DNA of 64,000 bases from Hydrolagus affinis (lineage: Eukaryota), in contig JAAILG010001244.1 of NCBI GenBank assembly GCA_012026655.1, positions 1-64,000 of the forward strand. Direction: 5' to 3'. The notes beneath the pieces are model-generated. The model ran no database searches. It was not told the DNA's origin and worked only from the letters and a program-made list of their open reading frames with translations. The translations under genes and the position numbers were made by a program. Position 1 is the stretch's first letter. Each line of letters starts with the position of its first letter. Shown here one piece after another: positions 986-54,100 of this stretch.

Positions 986-1372
986 AAACAACAACAACAA
1001 CTTTGATTTATATAACTCCCTCCACGCCAGGCAGTGTCTCAGAGCGCTTCACAATAATGGATCCCAGGGCCGAGCCAGGGGCAGGGGCAAAAAGGTGACC
1101 AAAAGCGCGGTCGAAAAGAAAGGTCTTTAGCCGAGACCTGAAAATAGGAAGGGAGGGGGTGAGATGAAAGGAGTGAGGAAGGGAGTTCCAGAACCTCAGG
1201 GCATAGTGGCTGAAGGCACAGCCGCCGATGTTGGAATGCAGGATTCGGAGGACGAGGAGGAGGCCAGGCCTGGTAGAGTGAAGGCAGCAGGTACTGTGAG
1301 GAGAAAGGAGGTCAAAGAGATAGGGGTATGCAGAGGAGTGGAGGGATTTCAAAACAAGAGTGAGGATCTTGA
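986..1372 (-). mobile_element. L2 LINE 3' fragment (same family as 19381-20313)
   Basis: AFSHYALRFWNSLP...LKTFLFDRAF; (GTT)n tail. Confidence 0.88.
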
Positions 1373-13300: not shown

Positions 13301-13457
13301 AGAATTATAGAATTATACAGCACAGAAGGAGGCCACTGCCCCGTGTCCTTTCCTCCCTACGTGAAAGGTGCTCTAAAAATGTAATTTTGTTGTTGTTTTG
13401 TTCTTATGCCTGTGCTGCATCTTTGAAAAGAGCTGTCCAAATCAATCCCAATCCCCC

Positions 13458-13872
13458 ACTCTTCAGGATCCTGGTCATCGCCTTCAAAGCCCTCCATGAT
13501 CTACTCCCACCCTACCTCTGCAACTTCTTAACCCCCTACCAACCTGACCGCTCCCTCCACTCAGTGGGCTCCAGCCTACTCCATGTCCCCCATCCCACCT
13601 GCCCCACCATCTGCAGACGAGCCTTCAGCCACTCTGCCCCAACCTCTGGAATTTCATCCTGCAACCCTTCAACTTGCCCCCTCCCTCGCCTCCTTCGAGT
13701 CCCACCTCAAGACCCTCTTCTTTGACGGTCCTATCGGTCACCCCCCATAACCCTTATTTCCTTCCCCCTTCCCCGATCCCGACCCCAGCTCGGGTCTGAA
13801 ACACTGACTGTCCAGTGCCTTGGGACATCCTCCCGACATGGCACTATACAAATGTAATTTTGTTGTTGCTGT
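13458..13872 (+). mobile_element. L2 LINE 3' fragment
   Basis: FRILVIAFKALHDLLPPYL...RAFSHSAP, followed by the L2 tail and (GTT)n. Confidence 0.85.
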
Positions 13873-19380: not shown

Positions 19381-20313
19381 ACACGCAGATGACACCCAAC
19401 TCTATTTCTCCACTTCACTTTGCGACCCCCAGTCCCCTGATGTTCTGAAGCCTGCCTGTCAGACATCAGGAGCTGGATGAGCGCAAATTTCTTGCAGCTG
19501 AATGTTGACAAGATGGAGGCCATACTCTTTGGCTCTTGTCAACGTCTCCATTCACATGGCTCTCACCTCCTCCACCTTCCCGGTCTCCCCCTGAAACTCT
19601 CCGAACCTGTCCGCAACCTTGGTGTCAGGTTCGACCCCCAACTGTCCTTCCTCCCCCACATCCGGTCCCTCACCAGCACTGCCTTCTTCCACCTCCAACG
19701 GATCGCCCATCTCCGGCAATACCTTACCCCAAAAGCCACTGAAACCCTGGTCCACACTTTCGTCACCTCACGGCTGGACTATTCAAATGCCCTCCTTGCC
19801 GGTCTACCCTCCACCACAATCCATAAAATCCAACTCATCCAAAACTCTTCCGCCCACATACTCACCCGCACCAAACTTCGCACCCCCATTATCCCAGTCC
19901 TTGCCAGACTTCACTGGCTCCCTATCCCCGAGAGGATTGACTTCAAGATCCTCACTCTTGTTTTCAAATCCCTCCACTCCTCTGCAACCCCCTACCTCTC
20001 TCCTCAAACCAGCTCCCATTGCGTTCGTTCCATCGGGTCAGGCCTCCTCCATATCCCCCGAATCCTCCACTCCACCCTCGACGGCCGTGCCTTCAGCCAC
20101 TATGCCCCGAGGCTCTGGAATTCCCTACCTCGCTACCTTCATCTTGCCCCCTCTATTCTCAGTTTCAGGTCCCAGCTAAAGACCTTTCTCTTCGACCGCG
20201 CCTTTGGTCACCTTTCTACCCCTGCCCCTGGCTCGGTCCCGGGATCCGCTATTATGAAGCGCTCTGAGACGCCGTCTGGCATGGAGGCCGCTATATAAAC
20301 CGAAGTTGTTGTT
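19381..20313 (+). mobile_element. 5'-truncated L2-clade LINE (C-terminal RT/ORF2 and 3' end)
   Basis: ADDTQLY at the 5' end; ORF 19477-20298 has NFLQLN, RNLGV, SRLDYSN, LHWLP and RAFSHYAPRLWNSLP; (GTT)n tail. Confidence 0.92.
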
Positions 20314-22719: not shown

Positions 22720-25700
22720 CTGAAAACCACACAGCTCAGTTAATAAAGCGCACAGCTGTAGCGAGAGGTTAGTCATCTAGGTAACCACTGCAATGTTACA
22801 CAGAGATTTACCTTCATAATCAATTTTCCCATCTTTATTTTTGTCTCCATCAACAAAGAGCTCTTCCAAGTCATCTTCAGTGATTATTTCTCCTGTGGTT
22901 TCCAGCATATACTGCAGTTCTTCGACATCAATGTACCCGTCAGAATTTCTAAACAAATATCATGAGTAATAAGTCATAGCTATGGGAGTTGCTGACTGTA
23001 TAAGATTACATAAATTACATAACATGTGAATTGTGTTAAAGTGCAGGCTGGTTCCAGGCGTGTAATTATTGCAGCCTAGCATTTTTAGAAAGCAATGAGG
23101 ACATGGCAACCAGGCAAGAATAATAATACTAATAATCCTTGCATTTGATATCGCCTCTTCCAGATGTCTCAAAGCACTTCACAGAATATACTGTAAAATG
23201 AATTCACTGTATGTATGTGGGTGAAACACGACAGCCAATTGCGCAATTATGACAGCCAGTGTCCCACAAACAGTCGTGGATTTGAGTGACCAAATTAATA
23301 TTTTTCTTGAGCGATTATGTGGAGTAAGGGAACTTGCCTAAGGTTTCACCCTGCCTGGAATTGAACCAAAGTCTTTCACTGTGCTCTAAGCACTGAGCCA
23401 CATCGTATTCAGGTCTATAGACTCTCACCTGTCAAACATTCTGAACAGTTCCGCCAGCTCTTCCTCTGACTTTCCTTTGCTATCATCCTTCATACAGCGC
23501 ACCATCATGACTAGAAATTCATCCAAGTCAACAGTTCCACTCCCTGCAGAAAATAAATCACAGGAGATGTGAGGAAACGAGAGGTGAGAGAATAGGAGGA
23601 GTAGGAGCCAATGTGGAGTATAAATTATACCAACCAACAAAACAGATGTTTCTTTGTTGCATCTATGACAAAAAAAATACGCAGGAAGCATAAAGGTAAA
23701 TTTAATCTATGGTTAGTAGTACGTTCTTTATTATTTCCTCCTGATTTTGTTACCCATGGCTTACAATGTAGAATAGAAAGGGATTATTTGAAACTAATAT
23801 CTGATTAACGTATTACAATAGTTTCAACATCTTTTAGATGAGATGATTATTTCTTGCTTGATGTCTTCATTGTGTCCAACTTCCCATCCTGTGATGCAAA
23901 CAACAACATCAATAATAATAAATAATTGCTTTTGTATAGCGTCTTTTATGTTGGGAGGATGTCCCAAGGCTCTGATAAAATGTCCTCAGATACAGATCAC
24001 TCACTCGTTGGTATTGATTTCTGACTTGACCTGTAAGGTGGTACTAAACAATCAGATCAAATCACAGTCACCCAGCATCCAGCCATTAAAGTTGGAATGA
24101 AGTTTCTTCTCACCATCTTCATCCACTTCATCGATCATCTCCTGCAGTTCCTCAGCGCTGGGGTTCTGATCGAGCATTCTCATCACCTTCCCCAACTCTT
24201 TGGTGCTGATACAACCATCCTCAGCACCTTGGACAAAGATGTCAAAGGCAGCTTTGAATTCTGAGCAAAACAAAGGGAAAGACCTGGTCAGGAACCATGT
24301 ACTGTACATAGCCTGGCTCTCCACTGGTGAACCATCAGTAACTGTTAGTAGAATGTCAGAATGTTTTTCGGTCAGTTGTTAATTGGATAGGACTAACACT
24401 ACAAATACATATTTCAATTTAATTTGCTCAGAAATGCTAATAAAATCAACAATTGTAACCTACTTTTATTTTGTAATTCCCAAATAATTATTATTTCTTT
24501 TTCATTCACCCATCCCCACAGGACTCAGGTTTAATTTGGGATGTCCTCCCCATGCCTTTCACACCAGAAGAACATCCCAAAGTGTCCCAGCAGCTTGAGA
24601 CATCCTTCCAACATGAAAGGCGCTATGTAACTGCAATTTATGTTTGTGTTGGTGCCTCATCCTTAAGGGTGGCACACCAACAATTAAGTCCCAATCTGAG
24701 GTTTGAACCCACAACCTTTTGACTCAGAGGCAAGTGTCATACCAGTTTAGTATGAGTGTCAGCTTGTTATTGCACCGCAAGCACTCACCAGCCTTTTGTT
24801 CTTCTGTGAGCTGCTCAACCTGTAAGAGAAACACATTGTTAGGCTCCACAGAATAATAAAAATGTTAATGACTTTATATCTATTTGTTTTATTAGCTGTT
24901 GGACACTTATTCAGATAATTGGTTCAAAACCAGTAATGAATGAATTAAGGTATAAATGATCCTTGTTCCCCAAACTAATATTTTAAAACACATGTTTGCA
25001 AAAGCTTAATTCGAAACATAAAATGCATAATTAAAATAATTCATTCCAAATTTAATTTACACTCATTCTCTTCAAATAAATCTTGCTGTTTATTCCCCAG
25101 CGGCACTGGAGTCCTAAGGCTCAGTGGTTAAAGCACTCGCCTCACTAGCAAGAGATGTGGGTTCAATTCCAGGCAGGTCAGGGTGAAACACTGGGTACGT
25201 TTCCTTACTCCACACACCTAATAATAATCCCTAAAAGAAAAGTTTTAATTGGTCATTTCAATCCACAACTGTTTGTGGGGACATTGCTGTGCATAATTGG
25301 CTGCCGCATTTTGCCTACAATCTACAGTCAATTCACTTTACATTGAAGCACTTTGAAACATCTAGAACATGTGAAAATGTGCTACACTGTATATTAAATG
25401 CAAGGATTATTATTGTGGGGTTAGGGTTATAGGCAGTTCACAAACAAACAGACTGTGCAAAAAAATTCCAAACATACTATTCACTACTTCCTTGAATAAT
25501 TGTAAATAATAATCTTTGCATTTGATCTACAGCCTTTTACAATTCAATACAAATTTATTACATTTATGTACATAGTGCCTTGCATGTCAGCAAGACATCC
25601 TAAAATCACATTGTCTAGATGTTACAAGGCATTTCACAGGACTTACTGCAAAGTCTAGTGTCTGTGAATACAATAGCCAATTTGCACACAGTCATGTCAC

Positions 25701-26293
25701 GCAAATAGCCATGAAGTGAATGATTCATTTTGTCCGGGGGATTGTTAAGCAGGATTCCAGGAAAAATTCTCCTCGCTTTTCAAATAGTGACAATAGCGCC
25801 ATAGGATCTTTAATGTCAACTTGAACAGTCAGATGAGATCTTAGTTTTTTTTTCATCTGACGGACAGTGTTCTCTGAGCATCGCACCTGTACACACTCAA
25901 AATCCCAATATGGGGATTGAACCCACACCTCAGTGACAAGACTGCTACAGGTAAGTCACACTAATACTAATCATTTCTTGTAATGCCAATTAGGTATTAA
26001 GTTTCATTGCTTAATATTTAAATATCTCCAGAAACAAGTAATCGATCTGATAGCTGCTTAATATTAATTTTAGCGACAGAATTGTTCAATTTGTCAATAT
26101 CTATTTCAAATAGCATTTAATACTTCTATTATTCCTGTAAACTTTTAACAGCTCAACGATTAAGAATAACTTGCAAAGCAGTACATGCATGAGTCAGAAC
26201 CATGTCAGAATGCTAGTGTTTTCTAATGTGACCCGTTAAAGTATTAAAATGTGCTTTAAGGCTGCTCACCGCGGCTTTATAGATATCTGACAT
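22688..26293 (-). CDS. TNNC1: Troponin C, slow skeletal/cardiac type (TNNC1-like), 6 coding exons, 161 aa
   Basis: Exons 26270-26293, 24789-24819, 24114-24260, 23429-23543, 22812-22948, 22688-22719 (24/31/147/115/137/32 nt), all GT-AG and in phase. Protein: [161 protein letters not shown]. Defunct EF-hand I and Cys35/Cys84 are diagnostic of the cardiac/slow type. May be a paralog rather than the strict ortholog. Confidence 0.95.
22812..22948 (-). CDS. TNNC1: TNNC1-like exon 5
   Basis: 137 nt, NSDGYID...DGKIDYE (EF-hands III/IV). Confidence 0.95.
23120..23400 (-). mobile_element. tRNA-headed SINE in TNNC intron 4
   Basis: Same family. Confidence 0.85.
23429..23543 (-). CDS. TNNC1: TNNC1-like exon 4
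   Basis: 115 nt, [10 protein letters not shown]...FRMFD. Confidence 0.96.
24114..24260 (-). CDS. TNNC1: TNNC1-like exon 3
   Basis: 147 nt, EFKAAFDIF...EVDED. Confidence 0.96.
24789..24819 (-). CDS. TNNC1: TNNC1-like exon 2 ([10 protein letters not shown])
   Basis: 31 nt, TTACAG acceptor and GTGAGT donor. Confidence 0.93.
25109..25414 (+). mobile_element. tRNA-headed SINE in TNNC intron 1
   Basis: Same family. Confidence 0.85.
25560..25950 (-). mobile_element. DeuSINE-type SINE in TNNC intron 1
   Basis: Reverse complement of the Deu core (aaatagtg...ccataggatctttaatgtcaacttgaacag). Confidence 0.7.
26270..26293 (-). CDS. TNNC1: TNNC1-like exon 1 (MSDIYKAA)
   Basis: ATG at 26293, donor GTGAGC. 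Confidence 0.93.
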
Positions 26294-26348
26294 TGTTGCT
26301 GCCTTCCTCGCCTCGCTCTCTCCTGGCTCCTGTTCCCTGCGGTTATTC

Positions 26349-28040: not shown

Positions 28041-29951
28041 AACAGCAAAATAAAATCTTGCTAAATACAGTTACCCTAACATCCTAGAATTCACATTTTC
28101 TGAATGTTCTACATTAACAACCATCATTACAGATACAAAGCTTATATGAATCAAAGTGTGATAGATCCATAATTCTTCTTGCGGGACAGAATTAGGGCTT
28201 AGACCAGTAACAATAACTTACTAAGATAGAATATTTTGTATCTATATCCAAAAAAACATACATTTTAAGCTTTAATGTCCAAAGATTGATCTGATGGATA
28301 TTTTAGAAGAGCACAATCCCTTGGCAGTACAAACACCACTCTGACAGTCAACTCAGTACATGTTGATACAGAAGGAAATCCACCGAACGGGCTGAAGAAT
28401 AATGCACTATAATCAATTGTTATTTAAAATAATTGGGTGGGAACAAAGGAACCTTTTGCTTCTATGTCACCATCTTTTTAAAGTGAATGGAACCCCAAGC
28501 AAAGTTGTCAGGCAAAATAATTTTCCTGTTTTGTTTCCTGTTTACCCTCCATCTGCTTCCAGTGAAGACAATGCTAATATTGTGTGTGCTTGTGCCTGGA
28601 ATGTTCTGAGCATTCTAGCAGGAGCCATATTGGATGTCCTTGCCTTTACCTAATGAAATATATATAATACAGTACAGGTATATAATAATTCTTGCATTTG
28701 ATATAGCAGCTCTCACATCGGATGTCTCAAAGCGTGTTACAGGATATGCTGTGAAGGTGGGGCGACTATGCATTTTGTGGCCGTGAATAAATAAAAGAAA
28801 ATCAGCATATGTTCATTATTTTACTCTTAGTACATCAGTACGTCAGCGCATATCGCAGTTGGTTCAAAACCGCTCATCTTTTTCTTGAAACCAACTAAAT
28901 TGTGTGTGATAAATTTCTTGTTGCAGATTATTTCATGATTGTTTCAACTACTTGGATTCTTTTTCACTTACATAGCGCCCCTCATGCAACGTAGCGACTC
29001 AGAGTACATTTTGCTTTCAAAGAACTGCTGCTTCTCTTCAACTATCTTCTCAGCTGGTCTTGAAATAGATGTTCCCTTATGATTTGATCCATTGTTGTGC
29101 ATCTGTGCATTGGTTTCACAGACAAGTTATGTTTCAGAGAAACCACAACCCTGTACTTTACTGTGGAGACTGGCTATGTGCCTCAGTGTTTCTGAAGATG
29201 GATAATAAGCCATGGACAAGCATATTGAGTAGTAAAATACATGCCAGTTTTATTTACAATTAATTCTATCAATAGACACAAATTACAAATGGTTCAATAC
29301 AAAAACCCTTAAAAGGTTCCAAATTGTCAGTCTTTTTTTTAACAAATAGTGTAAATAAAACTGTTAACAATCTTTATTTTATTCCCTAATGGAATCCAAT
29401 TCTTTCTTCCATTTGGTGATAATGACAATTTTCATAGCCAACATATCATAATATGGCAGATATCTCAACATTTGCCTGGTTCATAACAGACCCAAAGAAC
29501 TGTTGAATATTTCACATGCATAACAAGAACATGTATTTTGATCTTAAAATGAAGAGTAGCTATTAAACAGGATGACACACTGCATTGTTACCACATACTA
29601 ATCTCCCAGGAGTGATCAATGGGCAATTCAAGCCTTCTTTTATGGTGATACAATTGACACTATCTTCAGACTTCACTGTGGTACAAGAAGAGATTTGATT
29701 TATACCTCTGGCTTTAATAATCTGGCTCTTTGCAAAAAGATGTGAAAAGGATTTTTTATTACATTTAAATATTTCAGTAAATGGGAACACTTCATGTAAA
29801 GTGTGACTGTGATCAAAAGTTTTGGAATCTGTTAGTGCATTGTGGATTGGTACAGGAATAGGTGGTTTGGCCTGTTGAGTGAATTCGGCCACTTCATTAC
29901 ATCAAGGCATCATTATATATTATTACAATACAGTATATATAATTATATATT

Positions 29952-30232
29952 ATAATAATCCCTGCATTTGATATAGTGCTTTTCACATCTTCTGAGCATC
30001 TTAAGCACTTCACAGAATATACTGTAAAGTGAATTGACTATATATGTGGGCAAAACGCAGCAGCCAATTGTGCACAACAGTGTCCCACAAACAGTTGTGG
30101 ATTGAAATGATAAAAAAAAATCCCCAAAGATTATTATCAGGAGAAAGGAAACTTGCCCAAGGCTTCGCTCTGCCTGGAAGTGAACCCAGGTCTTGCAATG
30201 CAAGTGATCTGACCACTGAGCTAGAGGACCTC
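29952..30232 (-). mobile_element. tRNA-headed SINE
   Basis: Same family. Confidence 0.85.
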
Positions 30233-30545
30233 AATACTCAATTTCTCTTCATATCCTTGAAGCATTTACTTCTCAAATATCAGTGATTCACTTATAGTAA
30301 TTCACCCGAGCCATTGATTATTCAGGATTTTATTAATTTAATATTATTGTTTTATCTCATCTCAGATACACACAAAAATGATAATAAAACCAATACAAAT
30401 CTTAAATATGTACACTATATTAAAAAAATGATGCCTGCATGTTACCAGTGATTTTAACTACCTAAATATATAGGTTAATTAGATTTTAGTGATTTTTTTT
30501 CTAAAAGTATTCATGAACTGAGCACTTTAAAATGTCGAAACATAT

Positions 30546-30990
30546 TTATCTTTGCAAATTAATTTGCAAAGTCGCCCTGTCATTTTGGGGACTCCTGTTT
30601 GTCTTTGGCTTTCTTTTTATTTTCTCCTTAAGTTTTAAAGTGGAGTTTTTAATAATTCTGGCGAGGATCTGCTGCCTCCGGTGTGACTGTGGTGGAAATG
30701 CAGCAGATGTCTCTGTTGGCCTGGCTGCTTGTTTCAGCTGATAGAGTGACATGGCAGCATTCAGTTGTCTGCTAGCTGCTTCTTGTGCTCCATCTGCCCT
30801 GTAGTTAAAGGAACGAAATACTCCCTTTTCCACATCCCAGTCAAACCCACCAATTCGAATCAAATATTTATAACTGGTATATGACCATCCAGGGCATTCA
30901 ACATCAGTGCTATCCTTTCTAACGACCTTATATCCACATCCTATCCTGATCCTCTCACATTCCATGGGCCATGCAGAGGGACACAGTGGC
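30546..30990 (-). CDS. MSMB-like gene exon 3 (PLCPSAWPMECERIRIGCGYKVVRKDSTDVEC plus tail)
   Basis: Pyrimidine-rich acceptor; in frame with the 139-aa ORF 30546..30965; AATAAA at 30329-30334 downstream. Confidence 0.72.
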
Positions 30991-33423
30991 CTGCGAAGAA
31001 CACATGAAAGAAATTGTTATTACGTACACTGTAAAGAATGTACAAAACTACAGTATATGTTTTTTAGTTTTACATCATTCATGCTCATTTATCTCAATGA
31101 ATAAATACAATACTAATCTATGGCTAACCTAAGACTGAAATCATGGCCAGCTCAACGAGACATTATGAGATACGTTTAACTAAAATATTTGCAGACCTTT
31201 CAAGTAGATTAACAAATTAAGAGAATGCGTGCACTATGATTCTTAAGTATAGTGATAGTTTCTGCATAAGTCAGATATCTGGCCAACAAAACAATAGGAA
31301 ATAAGCGTAGGACTATAAATCATCTTGTGTGTTCAATTAAGGATCTTGTGGGTTAAAAGGCTCACCAGAAGACAAGTTTCAAATGCAAGGATTATCAATA
31401 ATAATCCTTGCATTTGATATAGCGCTTTTCATGTCTTCTGGACGTTTCAAAGTACTTCACAGAATATACCATAAAGTGAATTGATTGTATATATGTGGAC
31501 AAAACTAAAATTAATATTCTTGTCTTATGAGAAAGAGCTTCAGCTTGCAGGTTTGAAGACACCTTTACGTATTTACATGGATTCCTGTAGATCTTGCTTC
31601 AATAAATGATGATAATAATCCTTGCATTTGATGTAGCACTTTTCACATCTTCTAGAGGTCTCAAAGCGCTTCACAGAATATACTATGAAGTTAATTGACT
31701 GCACATTAGTGGGTGAAACACGGCAGTCAATTACGCACAGCAGTGTCCCACAACCAAATTATTATTGGGGGGGGCGGGAGGGGGGTATTATTATCAGGCG
31801 TGTGGAGTATGAAAACTTGCTCCAAGTTTCACCCGGCCGGGAAATGAACCCAAGTCTCTCACTTGCAAGGCAAGTGCTCTAACCACTAAGCTACAGAATT
31901 CCATATCTCTTCAGCATCACTTTAGCCCCAGGGGGATCTCACCCGTCACCCTCTTTCTTTGCTAATCCCCCCACCCCACTTCCACACACACACACACAAA
32001 AACACATGGAGGATAAATTTGGAGTTACCCCACCCACCAGCTCAATGACCCAGAACTTTCTGGTCCTAAGTCTAGAGTTGCCCAGGATGTTATACATCAT
32101 ACACTGTCTCATACAGATGACCTTGATAAAAATCACCCTGTAATTAATGTCTTGCAGGAAAATTGTTTAAACACACCAGAAGTCCATCGATATCCAGTAC
32201 GGTTAATTTACTTACGTCTCACATTCTTGAAAGACATCTCCACTCACTAAAATACAACGACAGAGCTTGCAGCCTTCCCTTGGGTTCTCCTGCCACTGGG
32301 TACCAACCAGCTCCTGAGAGCAGTGACCTAGATGTAGACATGAAACCACAATGACTAAGTCGGTGCCTTTTCATCGTATCAATGATGGAATGTATATAGA
32401 CCAATATCGAAATGTCTCGCAAGTTTGAACCGCATTCCTATCATTAGTCAACCAATTTCTTTCATTGCAGTTATTTTATGCATGACTCAATTTACACACA
32501 TTAACTTCTAGATGTTCATGTATGTTTAAACAATTCTGTAAACCTCTCACTTAGAAATTAGCTTACAGAACATGTCTCTTAATGGCAGTTCTGACGAAGG
32601 TTCGAGGACCCGAAATGTCCTGTGCATTTTGCATTACACAGCCTAAACTATAACCTGAGTCCAGGTTTGGTTGAATTATTTATAAAACCAGCAGGACTCT
32701 TTGCCATTAATTCCAACAAAGGTGCATTTCAATAGAACGATTTAACATCAAACATAATGTGTTCTATTTTAATATGTCTCAAAATCAGTTCAAAATGTAG
32801 ATTGAGCCTCATCAGACTTGTAACAATCTGAATGTCATTTCATACAAAATATCTCGCATGAAATTCAGAAATTCACCGGAGAATTCAATGGGTGTAAATG
32901 GATATGTCGACAGATCTATTGAACACACACAGTATTTAATGGTAAACAAAACACAAAATACTACAGATGCTGGGAATCTGAACCAAAAACAAAAGTTGTT
33001 GGGGAAACTCAGCAGGTCAAACAGCATCCATGGAGAAAGGAAAAGGAGTCAACGGTTCGGATCTACAACCGTTCTGACAAACGTTGTAGACGAAGGTTTG
33101 ATGAAGGTTGTAGACCCGAAACGTTTGTATTTAATGGTATTGCCTCCTTCCAAACCCAAACTGCTCTTGAAGTAGATGCAAAGTTGAGCTGTTTACCAAC
33201 TGAGAAGCTGCACTTGTTTTTACCAACTTTCTTTACCACCAGAACCATGTGGTATTACACACATAATTCCTACCTTTGTCTGCCTACACACAGAATGGGG
33301 GTGTTTTTTTTTAGAAAAATGAAAAGTTAGGCGAGTCTTACCCAGATCAGCACCAAGCAGCATTTGTGTGGTTTGAGGAACAGCCCAGGCGACCCACAGC
33401 AGGGTGGTATAGAGACCCATCAT
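30546..33423 (-). CDS. Putative secreted beta-microseminoprotein (MSMB/PSP94/MSMP)-like protein with long basic C-terminal extension, 3 exons, 212 aa
   Basis: Exons 33342-33423 (82 nt, signal-peptide-like, G|GTAAG), 32216-32327 (112 nt, CTAG| and |GTAAGT) and 30546-30990 (445 nt, TTCTTCGCAG|). Phases 1 and 2 join into one ORF: MMGLYTTLLWVAWAVPQTTQMLLGADLGHCSQELVGTQWQENPREGCKLCRCILVSGDVFQECETPLCPSAWPMECERIRIGCGYKVVRKDSTDVECPGW... The W..CxxCxC and CxYxVVxK...C motifs resemble MSMB. Confidence 0.7.
31610..31902 (-). mobile_element. tRNA-headed SINE in intron 2 of the MSMB-like gene
   Basis: Same family. Confidence 0.83.
32216..32327 (-). CDS. MSMB-like gene exon 2 (HCSQELVGTQWQENPREGCKLCRC...ECE)
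   Basis: Only one of three frames is open, and it fits both neighbouring exons; consensus GTAAGT donor. Confidence 0.72.
32950..33125. mobile_element. Same repeat: minus copy joined head-to-head to a plus hammerhead-like core
   Basis: caaaatactacagatgctgggaatctg...aacggttcggatctacaacc, then TTGATGAAGGTTGTAGACCCGAAACGTT. Confidence 0.65.
33342..33423 (-). CDS. MSMB-like gene exon 1 (signal peptide)
   Basis: In-frame stop upstream; ATGATGG; hydrophobic LYTTLLWVAWA with an A-X-A site; phase-1 donor GTAAGA. Confidence 0.6.
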
Positions 33424-33506
33424 CACCTGGTGTAACCAGTCTCAGGACAAATACTGCAGACGATGAATAATCTCCTCCCTTGAAGAGCCACACCTTAACT
33501 GGCCTC

Positions 33507-33514
33507 TTTAAATA
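33507..33514 (-). promoter_or_regulatory. TATA-like box of the MSMB-like gene
   Basis: TATTTAAA about 85-90 nt upstream of the ATG at 33423. Confidence 0.4.
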
Positions 33515-34779
33515 CAATATTGAGACAGCCAGACACCTCCCCTCAACCCTCCCAAACGTGCATCCTTCCTGAGCCTCTGGCTATGTGAGAGTCGTGTGTG
33601 TGTGAGACCAGGGCGCTCCTGTTTCGTGCTGGACGTGTCCACTTGCCCACATATTCCAGATGATTGATCCCAGTGGAAAATAACACCTGTAAACGGCAAA
33701 CCAGTGTCCACACCCCTGTCACTCACTGCCCTGTCTGCCTAGCCCTCTCCCACATGAACACATGTTAGTCAATGAATTTCCCTTCTGATGTACGTGGAGT
33801 CTCACACACAAGTCATGGTGATATCAACTACTGGGATATCAGAAGAACTTTGCCTTGTCATAAAAAGCCTGGGGTGGTGGGGGGGAAATGGGTTCTCAGT
33901 TGAATTAAAAACTAAAAGGGTTAAAGGCATTCAGTGCTGAGTGAGCCTGTGTCCATCCTATAATGTTTTAGTTTATAAAAATGCAAGATCCTCTTAGTTG
34001 TTTCCTGCTAAATTTATTGCTGTTTCTGAGCTTGACTTGCAGATAAATCAATCAACACAAAATGGACTTCAGTTTTAACATTGACCCAATAATATTGCAA
34101 GTAAATTGCTGTTAATTATGTTGTTAAAACCTTTATTATCTTCAAATCCACTTAAACTTTAAATATTTATTTTGATTATTAGCTAAAAGAAAAATAATGT
34201 ATTTCAGTACATTTATTGCTTAAATATATTGATCTTTAATTGGTCAAATGGATCAATTGGTCAAATACAGAAACGTATAATGAGAGGGGTTTCCGAACAG
34301 ATATGTCTTACTTTCTTCAGAAAATATACTGCAAAGATATCTCGAAGAACATTGAAACACACAAAGACATCAATAAGCGGTTTTGATGACTACAAAATCA
34401 ATGACAGAACATGTTGATAAAACATTTATTTCTTTAACATTTAATATATATGTTGCTATTTTGAAAAACAAATATTATCGAATATTACAAGAAACTGAAT
34501 GAATTGAAGGTTTGTAACAAATAATATAAAATGCCACAATTGAGCTCCTATCTAAGCGATCATCTGGAGAGAGTGTATTGTTTGTGGTATAAACTGTGAA
34601 AAATTCTGAATGACACAAAGCAATCTCCACAGCCCAGAAAGGCTCCAACTTTCAATTATTGGTTTTAATCCCATATAACCTTAATCCGATTCTGCATTCC
34701 TCAATTCCCAAAGGGAATTGTTCACTGGTTGAGTGACAAACTTGTCTGTGAAATATTTAGTATATTTTACAACAATTAT

Positions 34780-34879
34780 NNNNNNNNNNNNNNNNNNNNN
34801 NNNNNNNNNNNNNNNNNNNNNNNNNNNNNNNNNNNNNNNNNNNNNNNNNNNNNNNNNNNNNNNNNNNNNNNNNNNNNNN
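34780..34879. other. Assembly gap (100 N, probably of unknown size)
   Basis: Run of exactly 100 N followed by poly-C. Confidence 0.99.
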
Positions 34880-51100: not shown

Positions 51101-54100
51101 TTGAAACACTATTACAGGTAAGACAGAATTAGGTGAATTAATTACTGTTTGGGGTAGAAATAATGCTAATCTTTACATAGCACTGAAAAAAGTGGGGGTC
51201 GGGGTGATGGGTAGGGGGCAGAGGTATTCTGGTTATTGGCTGGTTAGCTTGATTCAGAACTATTTTAGCACATTTCTGCGACATTTTGAGATCTCGTAGA
51301 GGCACGCAGTGAAGAGAGTGGTGCCAATTAAAGTCAATATAAAGATAGTAAGAAGAAACTTTCGTACACCAGCAGTTTCTCAGTCCGTTCTCGTTAGGAA
51401 AAAAACAACGACAACAACAAAAATCACATTTATAGAGCGCCTTTCACGTGGGAGGACATCTCTGAAACAAGAGAACTGTTATGGTTTTTACCTTGCCTTT
51501 TTAGAAAATAGAAAGATCATAACAAATAAACAAGGAACCGTTTGATGCATGAAGATAATCCAGGTTCTAGCAATCCGTCAGTGAAAAATAATCATCTGAC
51601 CTCTTTCTTTTTTCTTCGGGTGATAGCATTATCTGCTGTTTTATTTGCCTTCCTGTCACTGCCTAACAGAAATGTGGACTTGCACAAATGCTGGCGAGTC
51701 CTGGCCCGTTTACAGTCTTCATTCCGAGCAATAGCGCTTTTGGAAGATTGAAAGATGAAACACTGGATTATTTACTCTTACCAGAGGTAATAAAATAGTC
51801 AATTTCAAGTAAGAAGGGTTTAATCTGCCAGTTTATCCCATAGCTGTAAATTTTCTCATTTCCACTGTTTTGTTTTGTTGTCGGAGTTGTATGTATTGCT
51901 TTGATTTTATTTGTATCTCTTTTATTCAGGGTGAACACAAGCTTAAGGAATTGCTGAGACATCACATCATTCCTTCTTCTAAGGTTTGTTGTTCATTTAT
52001 TATTGCTTCTAAACGCAAATATCAAATCTGAAAGTGGGAATATGCAAATAAAAAACCCTCGCTACTCACTCAGTGATGTTCCTCTGCTGTATCATGCAAT
52101 GCTAATAATAGCTCCCAAATTAATACAAGATAAAATTAAACATTGTCTGCAACTATGTAATAATTGGTGTGTGCATCTTTAAATAAACCTGAGAAAAGGG
52201 AACAACATCACACCAGTTTAATTGCATAAAAGAACATTATATTTTTTAATTCCCCAAACAAGAATGGGTGCTTTAGTTTTTGCCCAGTTAAAAGATTATC
52301 ACTTTGTTCCAAACCTAACAGAACTTTTTTTTGTTTCACCAGCTGGATGTTTCGAATCTCCTCACCTCTCCGCTGATCCTTAGCCTGGCAAATCAACTCT
52401 TGACTGTGAACCTAAGCCACAATGTAAGTACATCACTCATTACTGAGCTCACTTACTTTTTTGTGGCAGGTACTTTATATGGACATTGTTTTCAAATTGG
52501 GGGAAAAAAACTATTAAATGCATCAGCCTATCCGCTCCCTCCACTCAGCAAAGGCTCGGTCTTTGATGGTTGGGCCTTCAGCCTCTCTGCTCCCACCCTC
52601 TGGAACTCTATCCCATGTTCCCGTCGCCTCACTCCCTCCCTCGCCTCTTTGAAAGCACGCCTCAAGACCCCCCTCTTCCACTGATACCCTCCAATCTTCT
52701 CCCCTCCCTGACTGGTGTTCCAAGCCCCAAAGTGAATCCACAACCTTCTGACTCGGAGGCAAGAGTCAGATGTAGGGGAAATCCATCACAAGATTTACGG
52801 TAATGTGTACATACTGTATATTACGTAGGTGAACACCGTTTATCGTGACGAGAAGGTTGGGACTAAATTACACAATTAAATTGCAAATTGGATTGGTTTT
52901 TAAAAAATCTTGTTGATCATTCATTCACAGGGGCAGATTGTGCTGGGTGACCAGGACGCAGGTATTACTGACGCAAACGCAATTGGCAAGAATGGCCGTA
53001 TCTATGCACTGGATAGTGTCTTAATTCCGCATTCAATTCTCCCAATTCTACCCCAAAGATGCGATGAGAAATCATACAGAATCAGAAAGGTAACGCTGCT
53101 GTCTGATACACTGACAGAATATTATTGCTGCATGTTTTTATCAACAAAATCGTTACGCTTACTTAGAAAATAGTTTTCTTCAACTTAGTTCTGAATGTAT
53201 TGAGTGACTAATTACAATATAAAAATTCTCTCATGGTTTTTATCTCCCACATATACATGCACCCACACCCTCCCACACTCACACCCACTCACATATACAA
53301 GAAGGAAATAATATATGGAGTTTTTTTTGATAACATCCACCCCTCTAAAGCCTTTCAAATATAACTTCAAAGACTTTCAATACTGTGTAATTTGCATACA
53401 GGCTAAGCAATATTTGTAATTGTCTAGTTATTATACTAGACATTTATTGAAAACTATTTGAACTGATTTCAAGTATTTTGCCCACATATTATAACACATA
53501 GAGGCGCATCACTTTCCAGTATATACTGGTAAGCGCTTTGAGATGTCTCGTTGACATGATTAGGTGCTACATATATCAAATGAAAGGATTATTGTTAGAT
53601 CAACTTATGTGTTTAATTTGTAATTTCACTGCTGGTCACAGTTAATTTAGGGAGGGTTTTTCAGTGCTGTAGGGCTATCAGTGGCGGAATACTGAGTAGC
53701 TCCATCAATTCCCACAGTCTCCATAATGGGATAAACAGGAGATTTGCAAAAACTAGACTTTCAAACCAACAAAATGCTTTCGTATTTATTCAGGGTTCCT
53801 GTGTCAGTTGCACCAAAAGGTACTTCAGCTTTTGTCCTCCTGGGATGGCTTCCATGGTAAGTGTACATTTACTGATTAATAATATAAATAATTTGGAATA
53901 AAATGCAAAATACTGCAGATGCTGGAAATCTGAAACAAAAACTGAAATGGCTGGGAACACTCAGCAGGTCACGCAGCATTGATGGAGAAGGAAAGTGGGT
54001 GAACGTTTCAGGTTGAATGGTCGTGGACGCAAAATGTTGACATCATTTGGAATGATTTGTCGAGAGGTCCATGTCAGAGCAAAGTCAATTGGGACTTTTA

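What the first reader, a model, noticed from the sequence alone, without database searches (positions are those of the whole stretch)
30546..33423. Cryptic 3-exon gene for a beta-microseminoprotein-like secreted protein with a 115-aa basic tail, between troponin C and stabilin-2
Seen: three minus-strand exons with canonical splice sites and matching phases give one 212-aa ORF. It has a signal-peptide-like N-terminus, 9 Cys within residues 30-97 (C30,47,50,52,63,68,76,83,97), a TATA-like box upstream and AATAAA downstream. The ORF track shows only pieces. Known: MSMB/PSP94-family proteins (also MSMP and snake small serum proteins) have W...CxxCxC...CC...P...C...CxYxVVxKxD...C, and GCGYKVVRKDSTDVEC matches that spacing. 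From my recall of MSMB, its introns also fall just before the second Cys and just after the CC. Inference: this is a divergent, possibly lineage-restricted member. It lacks both partners of the C2-C50 disulfide, has one extra Cys (possible dimer or partner bond), and carries a long Lys/Arg-rich tail not typical of MSMB, which could be antimicrobial or glycan-binding.
Basis: partly seen in the sequence, partly recalled or inferred. Interest (0 to 1): 0.85.

Follow-up and report, generated by a model that had tools for sequence, protein, structure and literature searches.

The report
Tailed microseminoprotein-like secreted protein gene
This is a real three-exon gene for a small cysteine-rich protein distantly related to beta-microseminoprotein, with an extra beta-hairpin and a long basic tail; cartilaginous fishes, sturgeons and sea squirts share it, and no database names it.

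Summary
Three minus-strand exons (33423-33342, 32327-32216, 30990-30546) have GT/AG sites and compatible phases. Each matches, without gaps, consecutive parts of one 211-aa Callorhinchus milii protein, "uncharacterized LOC103179914".

Pfam PSP94 does not hit the exons, the C. milii orthologue or any of 8 tailed relatives. Homology still shows in three ways:
- phmmer links the orthologue to bony-fish proteins that pass the PSP94 cut-off.
- Profile-profile comparison gives 98.1% probability.
- A profile of the subfamily finds only beta-microseminoprotein in the PDB, and the AlphaFold model's best structural matches are MSMB structures, at modest scores.

The subfamily keeps 8 of the 10 family cysteines. 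It adds a conserved 20-residue extension and a basic tail (net +7 to +26) in chimaera, sharks, sturgeon and Ciona. The ninth Cys is specific to this window. The gene is unnamed rather than cryptic.

RNA evidence is minimal: about four reads on exon 3 and no splice junctions. Function is inferred: a secreted binding protein held on polyanions by its tail.

The parts
33342..33423 (-). Coding exon 1. Holds the start codon (ATG at 33423-33421, or the second ATG at 33420-33418, where the C. milii model starts) and a hydrophobic, signal-peptide-like N-terminus. The donor GT is at 33341-33340.
   Evidence: 23/26 identical to P0001 residues 1-26
32328..33341 (-). Intron 1 (GT...AG, phase 1). It contains a high-copy repeat at about 32852-33099.
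32216..32327 (-). Coding exon 2. Encodes the N-terminal domain with five Cys, including the C-x-x-C-x-C motif.
   Evidence: 32/36 identical to P0001 residues 28-63
30991..32215 (-). Intron 2 (GTAAGT...CAG, phase 2). It contains SINE-like repeat copies at about 31395-31983.
30834..30990 (-). First part of exon 3. Encodes the C-terminal domain (three conserved Cys plus the window-specific Cys68) and the conserved 20-residue beta extension that ends in W-D.
30549..30833 (-). Rest of exon 3. Encodes the 95-residue basic tail: net charge +14, pI 11.4, 20 Lys+Arg.
30546..30548 (-). Stop codon TAA.
30329..30334 (-). Candidate polyadenylation hexamer AATAAA, 212 nt after the stop. Weak evidence, because the hexamer is common in this window.
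33506..33514 (-). TATA-like TATTTAAAG about 90 nt upstream of the start codon. It has not been tested.

Best explanation
The window holds an intact protein-coding gene, the orthologue of Callorhinchus milii LOC103179914.

Shown:
- Its product belongs to an unnamed, ancient subfamily of the beta-microseminoprotein (PSP94/MSMB/MSMP) superfamily.
- Exon 1 gives a signal-like N-terminus, exon 2 the N-terminal domain, and exon 3 the C-terminal domain plus additions.
- The subfamily keeps 8 of the 10 family cysteines.
- It adds a conserved 20-residue beta extension after the last Cys, then a poorly conserved tail that is always strongly basic.

Inferred:
- The four disulfides would be, in window numbering, C30-C52, C50-C63, C47-C83 and C76-C97. 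This is read by homology from the pairings published for MSMB.
- The protein is secreted. Its folded domain binds a protein partner, as other family members do: MSMP is described as a CCR2 ligand.
- The basic tail holds the protein on polyanions such as heparan sulphate, mucus, egg or matrix glycans, or microbial surfaces.

I put the gene and its family relationship at about 0.9, and the tail-as-polyanion-anchor mechanism at about 0.35.
For: Gene:
- Canonical splice sites and phases.
- One 211-aa C. milii protein covers all three exons in order without gaps, at 86-89% identity.
- Shark, sturgeon, coelacanth-group and Ciona relatives map to the same exons by tblastn.
- In unique sequence, RNA reads occur only on exon 3, the 3' flank and about 18 nt of intron 2 next to the acceptor. 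There are none on 11 unique bins elsewhere.

Family:
- phmmer of P0001 against 1.84 billion representatives gave 11 hits. They include bony-fish proteins at E 5.8e-6 to 1.6e-4.
- Three of the four full-length ones pass the Pfam PSP94 cut-off of 22 bits, at 28.9, 26.2 and 22.8 bits.
- 24 of 31 aligned relatives hit PSP94 at E<=0.1.
- hhalign of the tailed clade against the fish clade gives 98.1% probability, E 6.5e-14.
- The subfamily profile A2 has only 4 PDB hits at E<=10. All four are beta-microseminoprotein, at E 0.003-0.006. The mixed profile A1 reaches 2.5e-6.
- The AlphaFold2 model built from 31 sequences has block pLDDT of 91-98 over residues 31-110.
- The Foldseek top 3 of 350,542 chains are MSMB structures: probability 1.00, TM by target 0.54-0.64.
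- VIA-align rank 1 of 48,161 chains is chicken MSMB3, Z 5.2, the only Z>=5. The second look gives human PSP94 Z 5.1, MSMB3 5.0 and human MSMB 4.8.
- The ESM Atlas's nearest clusters are MSMP/MSMB.
- The gene has three coding exons, with the last encoding the C-terminal domain. This agrees with what PMC3268785 states for MSMP and for exon 4 of the family (passages).

Tail:
- All 9 tailed sequences examined have tails with net charge +7 to +26 and pI 10.6-11.8. They are the window, C. milii, 2 sturgeon, 3 shark-type and 2 Ciona.
- The tail is 80% identical between the window and C. milii, with no indel. The domain is 93% identical.
- Precedent: chicken MSMB3 is purified on heparin, and its heparin-binding region is linked to antibacterial activity (PMC8167871, passages).
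- MSMP/PSMP is described as a CCR2 ligand (PMC13142124, passages).
Against: - Pfam PSP94 gives no hit at E<=10 for any exon, for P0001, or for any of the 8 tailed proteins.
- phmmer of P0001 against PDB sequences finds nothing.
- The tailed clade's own profile reaches MSMB only at E about 0.3.
- Structural scores are modest. Foldseek E is 6e-3 to 2e-2, none below 0.001. Z is about 5, only about 1 above unrelated rows.
- The model was built from an alignment that includes PSP94-positive fish proteins.
- Expression is barely supported. There are about four reads on exon 3 in one of three RNA runs, one of them running into intron 2. Depth is zero on exons 1 and 2, and no splice joint is listed.
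- The chimaera N-terminus is only weakly signal-like, and no signal-peptide predictor was available.
- The window has Cys where all relatives have an invariant Arg/Lys. This could be a damaging change.
- Nothing here tests binding of anything.
Confidence: 0.8

Rival explanations
1. It is simply the chondrichthyan orthologue of the known gene MSMP (prostate-associated microseminoprotein), with a lineage-grown C-terminus. On this reading it is not a separate subfamily.
For: - The ESM Atlas's two best feature hits are MSMP clusters, at 0.87 and 0.86.
- The gene has three coding exons, as stated for MSMP (PMC3268785).
- The nearest non-tailed vertebrate relatives are a well-conserved fish group. 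That paper says MSMP is the best-conserved branch.
Against: - The family, MSMP included, is described as having ten Cys (PMC3268785). This protein has eight conserved Cys.
- The tailed clade plus tunicates is split from the fish group with 100/100 support.
- The tail and the 20-residue extension are shared with Ciona. They are therefore old, not lineage-grown.
- I could not obtain bona fide MSMP or MSMB sequences as stored proteins, so no tree with them was built.
Confidence: 0.15
2. The protein is a cationic antimicrobial effector, and the basic tail kills or agglutinates microbes directly.
For: - Tail pI is 10.6-11.8 in all 9 tailed sequences.
- Chicken MSMB3 is reported as an egg antibacterial protein whose heparin-binding region is implicated (PMC8167871).
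Against: - The best 18-residue hydrophobic moment of the tail does not exceed shuffles. Shuffles reach the observed value in 84/500 (window), 170/500, 334/500, 355/500 and 418/500 cases. There is therefore no sign of an amphipathic lytic helix.
- No expression site is known.
Confidence: 0.2
3. The tail is a pro-region cut at its dibasic sites. Cutting would release either the folded domain or a peptide.
For: Dibasic or multibasic runs occur in every tail: RR and KRK in the window, and KRR and KKRK in sharks.
Against: - The sites are not positionally conserved between chimaera, shark, sturgeon and Ciona.
- No conserved peptide lies between them.
- Basic runs are expected in any Lys/Arg-rich segment.
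Confidence: 0.1
4. In this species the gene is a decaying or silent copy, even though the reading frame is still intact.
For: - An otherwise invariant Arg is replaced by Cys, giving an odd Cys count.
- There is almost no RNA coverage and no junction reads in three poly(A) single-cell runs.
Against: - There is no stop, frameshift or broken splice site over 212 codons.
- There is no indel against C. milii.
- Of 6 differences to the second DNA source X1 inside the coding sequence, 4 are synonymous by my reading. The counts are too small for a test.
- The RNA runs sample one unknown cell source, and only 27-30% of each run was read.
Confidence: 0.07
5. The three ORF pieces join by chance and there is no gene.
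For: A 148-codon open frame at 38.5% G+C is expected about 0.4 times per 64 kb over six frames. This is my own arithmetic from the composition.
Against: Orthologues and homologues in at least 11 other species cover all three exons in order.
Confidence: 0.01

Closest known systems
Beta-microseminoprotein (MSMB/PSP94; Pfam PF05825; structures 3ix0, 2iz3, 1xhh, 6rwc)
   Same: - The Cys framework over the C-x-x-C-x-C motif, the inter-domain Cys and the C-terminal domain Cys pair.
- The predicted two-domain beta fold.
- The last exon encodes the C-terminal domain.
- It is probably secreted.
   Different: - It has eight rather than ten conserved Cys. The N-terminal Cys and one Cys of the CC pair are absent.
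- The stretch before the first Cys is shorter.
- It adds a 20-residue conserved beta extension and a 53-122-residue basic tail, so it is about twice the size.
- It has no Pfam PSP94 hit.
- It has three coding exons, whereas MSMB has four exons with the ATG at the end of exon 1 (PMC3268785).
MSMP / PSMP (prostate-associated microseminoprotein), a CCR2 ligand
   Same: - Three coding exons (PMC3268785).
- It is the nearest named cluster in the ESM Atlas.
- It is more conserved than MSMB-type genes: the domain is 93% identical between two holocephalans.
   Different: - The family is described as having ten Cys. Here there are eight.
- Orthology is untested.
- No evidence here bears on receptor binding.
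Unnamed bony-fish 8-Cys group ending in AYSWIG (coelacanth P0032, bichir P0035 'beta-microseminoprotein-like', many teleosts)
   Same: - The same eight-Cys framework.
- Closely similar P-[ST]-[SA]-W-P...C...C-G-Y-x-V-V core.
- hhalign probability 98.1%.
   Different: - The fish group has a 4-residue shorter N-domain loop.
- It ends 7 residues after the last Cys, with no extension and no tail.
- It is separated from the tailed clade with 100/100 support.
- It passes or nearly passes Pfam PSP94.
Chicken MSMB3 (egg-white heparin-binding antibacterial MSMB)
   Same: - It is the best structural match by VIA-align, Z 5.2.
- It is a cationic, polyanion-binding family member (PMC8167871).
   Different: In MSMB3 the positive charge sits on the folded domain. 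Here the C. milii domain is acidic (net -3, pI 5.0), and the charge is concentrated in a separate tail.

Membership tests
PSP94 / beta-microseminoprotein superfamily (Pfam PF05825) | Significant sequence similarity to accepted members | tested here: met
   - phmmer of P0001 against fish proteins gives E 5.8e-6 to 1.6e-4. Three of the four full-length fish hits pass the PSP94 cut-off.
- hhalign gives 98.1% probability.
- Profile A2 hits 4 PDB sequences at E<=10, all MSMB, at E 0.003-0.006.
PSP94 / beta-microseminoprotein superfamily (Pfam PF05825) | Pfam PF05825 score at or above the gathering cut-off (22 bits) | tested here: not met
   There is no PSP94 hit at E<=10 for the three exon products, for P0001, or for the other tailed proteins: 0 of 8.
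PSP94 / beta-microseminoprotein superfamily (Pfam PF05825) | Ten conserved Cys forming five disulfides (PMC3268785 and PMC8167871, passages) | tested here: not met
   - Eight of the ten positions are kept in the alignments.
- The window has a ninth, non-homologous Cys.
- Disulfide pairing itself was not tested.
PSP94 / beta-microseminoprotein superfamily (Pfam PF05825) | Two-domain all-beta fold (N-terminal Greek key, C-terminal beta-sheets) | tested here: met
   - The AlphaFold2 model of orthologue P0001 has pLDDT 91-98 over the domain.
- The Foldseek top 3 are MSMB, probability 1.00.
- VIA-align gives Z 4.8-5.2 over 65-74 residues, ranks 1-3.
- The scores are modest, and the model is of the orthologue, not of the window product.
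PSP94 / beta-microseminoprotein superfamily (Pfam PF05825) | Signal peptide and secretion | not testable with these tools
   - The window and C. milii have hydrophobic N-termini.
- The shark orthologue P0022 has a clearer one.
- No signal-peptide predictor was available.
PSP94 / beta-microseminoprotein superfamily (Pfam PF05825) | Microprotein size of about 10 kDa (PMC8167871) | tested here: not met
   - The product has 211-212 residues.
- 115 of them lie after the last Cys.
MSMP orthologous group | Three coding exons, with the last encoding the C-terminal domain | tested here: met
   The window's exon structure agrees with the statements in PMC3268785. Exact intron positions in MSMP or MSMB were not compared.
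MSMP orthologous group | Groups with named MSMP in a tree, or shares its synteny | not tested

The most novel reading that the evidence does not exclude
The tailed proteins are a fourth, unnamed vertebrate branch of the MSMB/MSMP/USM superfamily that dates back to the common ancestor of tunicates and vertebrates. It survives only in slowly evolving lineages (chimaeras, sharks, sturgeons, sea squirts) and was lost in teleosts and tetrapods. It would work as a tethered ligand: an MSMP-like signalling or binding domain held on heparan sulphate or mucus by a basic tail, in the way that tailed chemokines are held.
Probability: 0.3. Interest if true: 0.6.

Novelty: new variant of a known kind. Interest (0 to 1): 0.45.

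Why it matters
The MSMB/MSMP family is medically studied (prostate cancer risk, CCR2 signalling, egg and mucosal defence). Its members' basic functions and its deep history are still unclear.

A well-conserved, Pfam-invisible branch shows what the ancestral chordate gene may have looked like. That branch has one disulfide fewer, an added beta-hairpin and a charged tail, and is shared by tunicates, cartilaginous fishes and sturgeons. It also gives a natural domain-plus-anchor architecture to test.

Practically, at least eight database entries now labelled uncharacterized or hypothetical can be given a family. The PSP94 model could also be widened to catch them.

Tried and rejected
- **Pfam and PDB sequence searches of each exon alone**. 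They gave only chance-level hits: TSP_NTD at E 0.034, and CBL RING fingers at E 0.15 from a shared W-Q-E...C-x-x-C-R-C string. I rejected these as noise.
- **Pfam and PDB phmmer on the full-length orthologue**. Nothing was found.
- **Single-sequence AlphaFold2 of P0001**. Mean pLDDT was 35.5, so the model was unusable. It was replaced by the alignment-based model.
- **Amphipathic-helix test on the tail**. The result was not above shuffles, so I dropped the lytic-peptide idea as the main reading.
- **Cardin-Weintraub heparin motifs**. They are present in only some tails (C. milii, one sturgeon copy, Ciona) and absent in the window. I do not use them as evidence.
- **Search for a second copy in the window**. 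None was found.
- **tRNA scan of the SINE-like repeats**. No tRNA gene was called.
- **Literature.**
  - The five LOC identifiers occur in no held paper.
  - 'microseminoprotein' with 'shark' returned 11 papers. By their titles and abstract starts in the listing, none of the 10 listed is about a chondrichthyan gene.
  - One search was badly built. Its minimum of 2 of 5 terms did not force 'microseminoprotein', so it says nothing.
  - PMC3268785 reports Ciona homologues of the family. Its sequence list, tree and alignment are supplementary files, which were closed. They may already include the Ciona members found here.
- **Tree.**
  - It has no outgroup and cannot be rooted.
  - The place of the Ciona tailed protein is unresolved. 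The tailed group is one side of a branch in 48% of bootstrap trees.
  - 26 stored proteins went in.
  - Left out were near-duplicates (P0005, P0012, P0016, P0020, P0021), four further fish-group rows (P0007, P0009, P0027, P0031), fragments (P0011, P0015), the read-through model P0040 and the chimeric P0041.
Full report
**What is in the sequence**

On the minus strand there are three open pieces with canonical splice signals:
- Exon 1, 33423-33342: 82 nt, donor GTAAGA.
- Exon 2, 32327-32216: 112 nt, acceptor AG, donor GTAAGT.
- Exon 3, 30990-30546: acceptor CAG, stop TAA.

The in-frame pieces translate to 27, 36 and 147 residues. With the two split codons the total is 212 codons.

Every search on the window product was made exon by exon. 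The full-length tests were made on the natural orthologue that a search returned.

**Is it a gene?**

A search with the exon 3 product found one protein, P0001. It has 211 aa, is 86% identical, and is named "uncharacterized protein LOC103179914 [Callorhinchus milii]".

BLASTP shows that the three window pieces match P0001 in order and without gaps:

| Window piece | P0001 residues | Identities |
|---|---|---|
| Exon 1 | 1-26 | 23/26 |
| Exon 2 | 28-63 | 32/36 |
| Exon 3 | 65-211 | 126/147 |

The missing residues 27 and 64 are the two split codons. An independent gene model in another holocephalan therefore uses the same exons. It starts at the window's second ATG.

tblastn of P0001 and of shark, sturgeon, coelacanth and two Ciona relatives hits these exons and nothing else in the window. 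There is no tandem copy.

By my count, the folded part is 82/88 identical (93%) and the tail 76/95 (80%).

**RNA**

One DNA-like data set (X1) and three poly(A) single-cell RNA runs (X2-X4) were laid on 30000-33700.
- X2 gives depth 1.01, 0.77, 0.66, 0.66 and 0.15 in the five bins from 30496 to 31115. That is about four reads.
- One of these reads covers the acceptor and the intron base 30995, so it is unspliced or from DNA.
- X3 and X4 give traces (0.15 to 0.7) in the 3' flank, 30248-30495.
- The bins holding exons 1 and 2 have zero depth in all three RNA runs.
- No joint at the two predicted junctions is among the 15 listed. A further 2982 joints were not shown, and they lie in the repeats, judging by the ones listed.
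- Eleven other unique bins are empty. This makes the reads on the terminal exon mildly suggestive of a 3'-biased, rare transcript.

Expression and splicing in this species remain unproven.

The protein P0024 comes from a Logan assembly whose longest contig is 984 nt. It carries signal, domain and tail in one frame. This would be expected of a spliced transcript in a shark-like species. It is an inference, because I could not fetch the contig.

**What family?**

Direct tests fail:
- Pfam gives no PSP94 hit for the exons, for P0001, or for the other tailed proteins. That is 0 of 8 in all.
- phmmer of P0001 finds no PDB chain.

Indirect tests succeed:
- phmmer of P0001 against 1.84 billion cluster representatives gave 11 hits at E<=0.001:

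| Hit | E-value |
|---|---|
| Sturgeon protein | 5e-44 |
| Tunicate proteins from Ciona, Clavelina and Oikopleura | 5.6e-13 to 3.5e-8 |
| Five bony-fish proteins | 5.8e-6 to 3.7e-4 |

- Of nine of these hits scanned, three fish proteins pass the PSP94 gathering score of 22 bits (28.9, 26.2, 22.8). Two tunicate proteins miss it narrowly (21.5, 21.3).
- Over the 31-sequence alignment A4, 24 members hit PSP94 at E<=0.1.
- Profile-profile comparison of the tailed clade (A5, 7 sequences) with the fish clade (A6, 17 sequences) gives 98.1% probability, E 6.5e-14, over 58 columns.
- A profile of the tailed and tunicate proteins alone (A2) finds four PDB sequences at E<=10. All four are beta-microseminoprotein, at E 0.0033-0.006.
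- The mixed profile A1 reaches 2.5e-6.
- The tailed clade alone reaches only E about 0.3, though again only MSMB is hit.

**Fold**

- AlphaFold2 on P0001 without an alignment failed, with mean pLDDT 35.5.
- With A4 the mean is 72.5. Block means are 91-98 over residues 31-110 and 79 over 111-120. The model is all-beta to residue 123. The tail holds two low-confidence helices.
- Foldseek against 350,542 PDB chains ranks chicken MSMB3 (6rwc), human MSMB (2iz3) and human PSP94 (3ix0) first. Probability is 1.00, TM by target is 0.63, 0.54 and 0.64, and E is 6e-3 to 2e-2.
- VIA-align against 48,161 representatives ranks 6rwc first, at Z 5.2, rmsd 2.7 and 65 residues aligned. It is the only Z>=5.
- The second look gives 3ix0 Z 5.1 (73 aligned), 6rwc 5.0 and 2iz3 4.8. 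The next row is 4.3.
- Each score is modest. Their agreement with the sequence evidence is what counts.

**What is different**

- The literature describes ten conserved Cys in five disulfides (PMC3268785, passages; PMC8167871, passages).
- The alignments keep eight. No Cys precedes the one that aligns with the family's second Cys, and one Cys stands where MSMB has two adjacent ones.
- The window's ninth Cys (C68) replaces an Arg that is invariant in alignment A2 and is Lys in most of the fish group. It is specific to this genome or species.
- After the last Cys comes a 20-residue stretch with many invariant columns. It is modelled as extra strands.
- Then comes a tail of 53 to 122 residues. 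Its sequence drifts, but its charge does not: net +7 to +26 and pI 10.6-11.8 in all nine tailed sequences. The window's tail is 95 residues with net +14.
- The C. milii folded part is acidic, with net -3 and pI 5.0.

**Distribution**

- Tailed members: the window, C. milii, three named sharks (basking shark, whale shark, bamboo shark) plus one unnamed shark-like Logan protein (P0024), the sturgeon Huso huso (two copies) plus Acipenser, and Ciona.
- Short tunicate relatives: Ciona, Clavelina and Oikopleura.
- A separate 8-Cys group without extension or tail occurs in coelacanth, bichir and many teleosts.
- In an unrooted maximum-likelihood tree of 26 proteins, this fish group is split from the tailed and tunicate proteins with 100/100 support.
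- No tailed member was found in teleosts or tetrapods. The searches were word-indexed or clustered at 50%, so absence is not shown.

**How it probably works**

- Shown: a homologue of MSMB/MSMP with a conserved added hairpin and a conserved basic tail.
- Inferred: it is secreted. The domain binds a protein partner, as family members do; MSMP is described as a CCR2 ligand (PMC13142124, passages).
- Inferred: the tail anchors it to polyanions. Chicken MSMB3 binds heparin through positive clusters, which are linked to antibacterial activity (PMC8167871).
- A lytic amphipathic helix is not supported.

**Surroundings**

- A troponin-C-like EF-hand exon lies at 22959-22780 on the minus strand.
- EGF-rich exons of a stabilin-like gene run on the plus strand from about 37.2 to 58.7 kb, head to head with this gene.
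- I did not test stabilin-2 against stabilin-1.
- An N run at 34780-34879 was left untouched.

**Novelty**

- The gene models exist in databases but are unnamed and carry no Pfam domain.
- Their LOC identifiers appear in no held paper.
- PMC3268785 found Ciona relatives of the family in 2011 and defined three vertebrate branches.
- I rate this as a new variant of a known kind, of moderate interest.

Noticed in passing
window 29949-30247, 31395-31505, 31609-31983, 32852-33099: High-copy interspersed repeats, with SINE-like units in three copies around the gene. Reads pile up hundreds to thousands deep on them in both the DNA-like and the RNA runs, and produce thousands of false joints. ARAGORN calls no tRNA there.
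   Followed up: partly
window 22780-22959 (-) and about 26213-26300 (-): A troponin-C-like gene lies downstream on the same strand. It has an EF-hand pair exon (Pfam EF-hand_7, E 4.2e-10). An ORF carrying a troponin-C-like start lies near 26.2 kb; that resemblance is from recall.
   Followed up: partly
window about 37200-58700 (+): A long series of Cys-rich EGF-like exons, consistent with a stabilin-type gene, lies head to head with the gene studied (weak EGF_3 hit). Stabilin-1 versus stabilin-2 was not tested.
   Followed up: partly
window 30983-30981 (-), codon 68: Cys stands where the 8 other rows of alignment A2 have an invariant Arg and most of the fish group has Lys. This could be a fixed lineage change, a polymorphism or an error. 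No difference is listed there for the second DNA source, but 147 rows of that table were not shown.
   Followed up: partly
window 30612, 30812, 30935, 30960, 30990, 33409: The DNA-like run X1 differs from the window at these coding positions. By my reading, four are synonymous and two change the protein: Gly to Arg at codon 84, and Ser to Ala at codon 125. The second change matches the C. milii residue.
   Followed up: partly
proteins P0026-P0039, P0007-P0010 (not in the window): A well-conserved 8-Cys PSP94-like group ending in AYSWIG occurs in coelacanth, bichir and teleosts. Most entries are labelled hypothetical. Only some carry a precomputed PSP94 domain.
   Followed up: partly
protein P0024 (Logan assembly, not in the window): This shark-like tailed member has Tyr in place of the middle Cys of the C-x-x-C-x-C motif and a shortened tail. 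It could be an error, an allele or a decaying copy.
   Followed up: no
window 1008-1352, 13387-13725, 19477-20298, 52331-52684, 63594-63938: Several long ORFs share motifs and look like fragments of one retroelement family: reverse-transcriptase-tail-like sequences ending in similar Ser/Pro-rich strings. They were not classified.
   Followed up: no
window 34780-34879: A run of 100 N (assembly gap or mask) lies 1.36 kb upstream of the start codon. It was left untouched.
   Followed up: no
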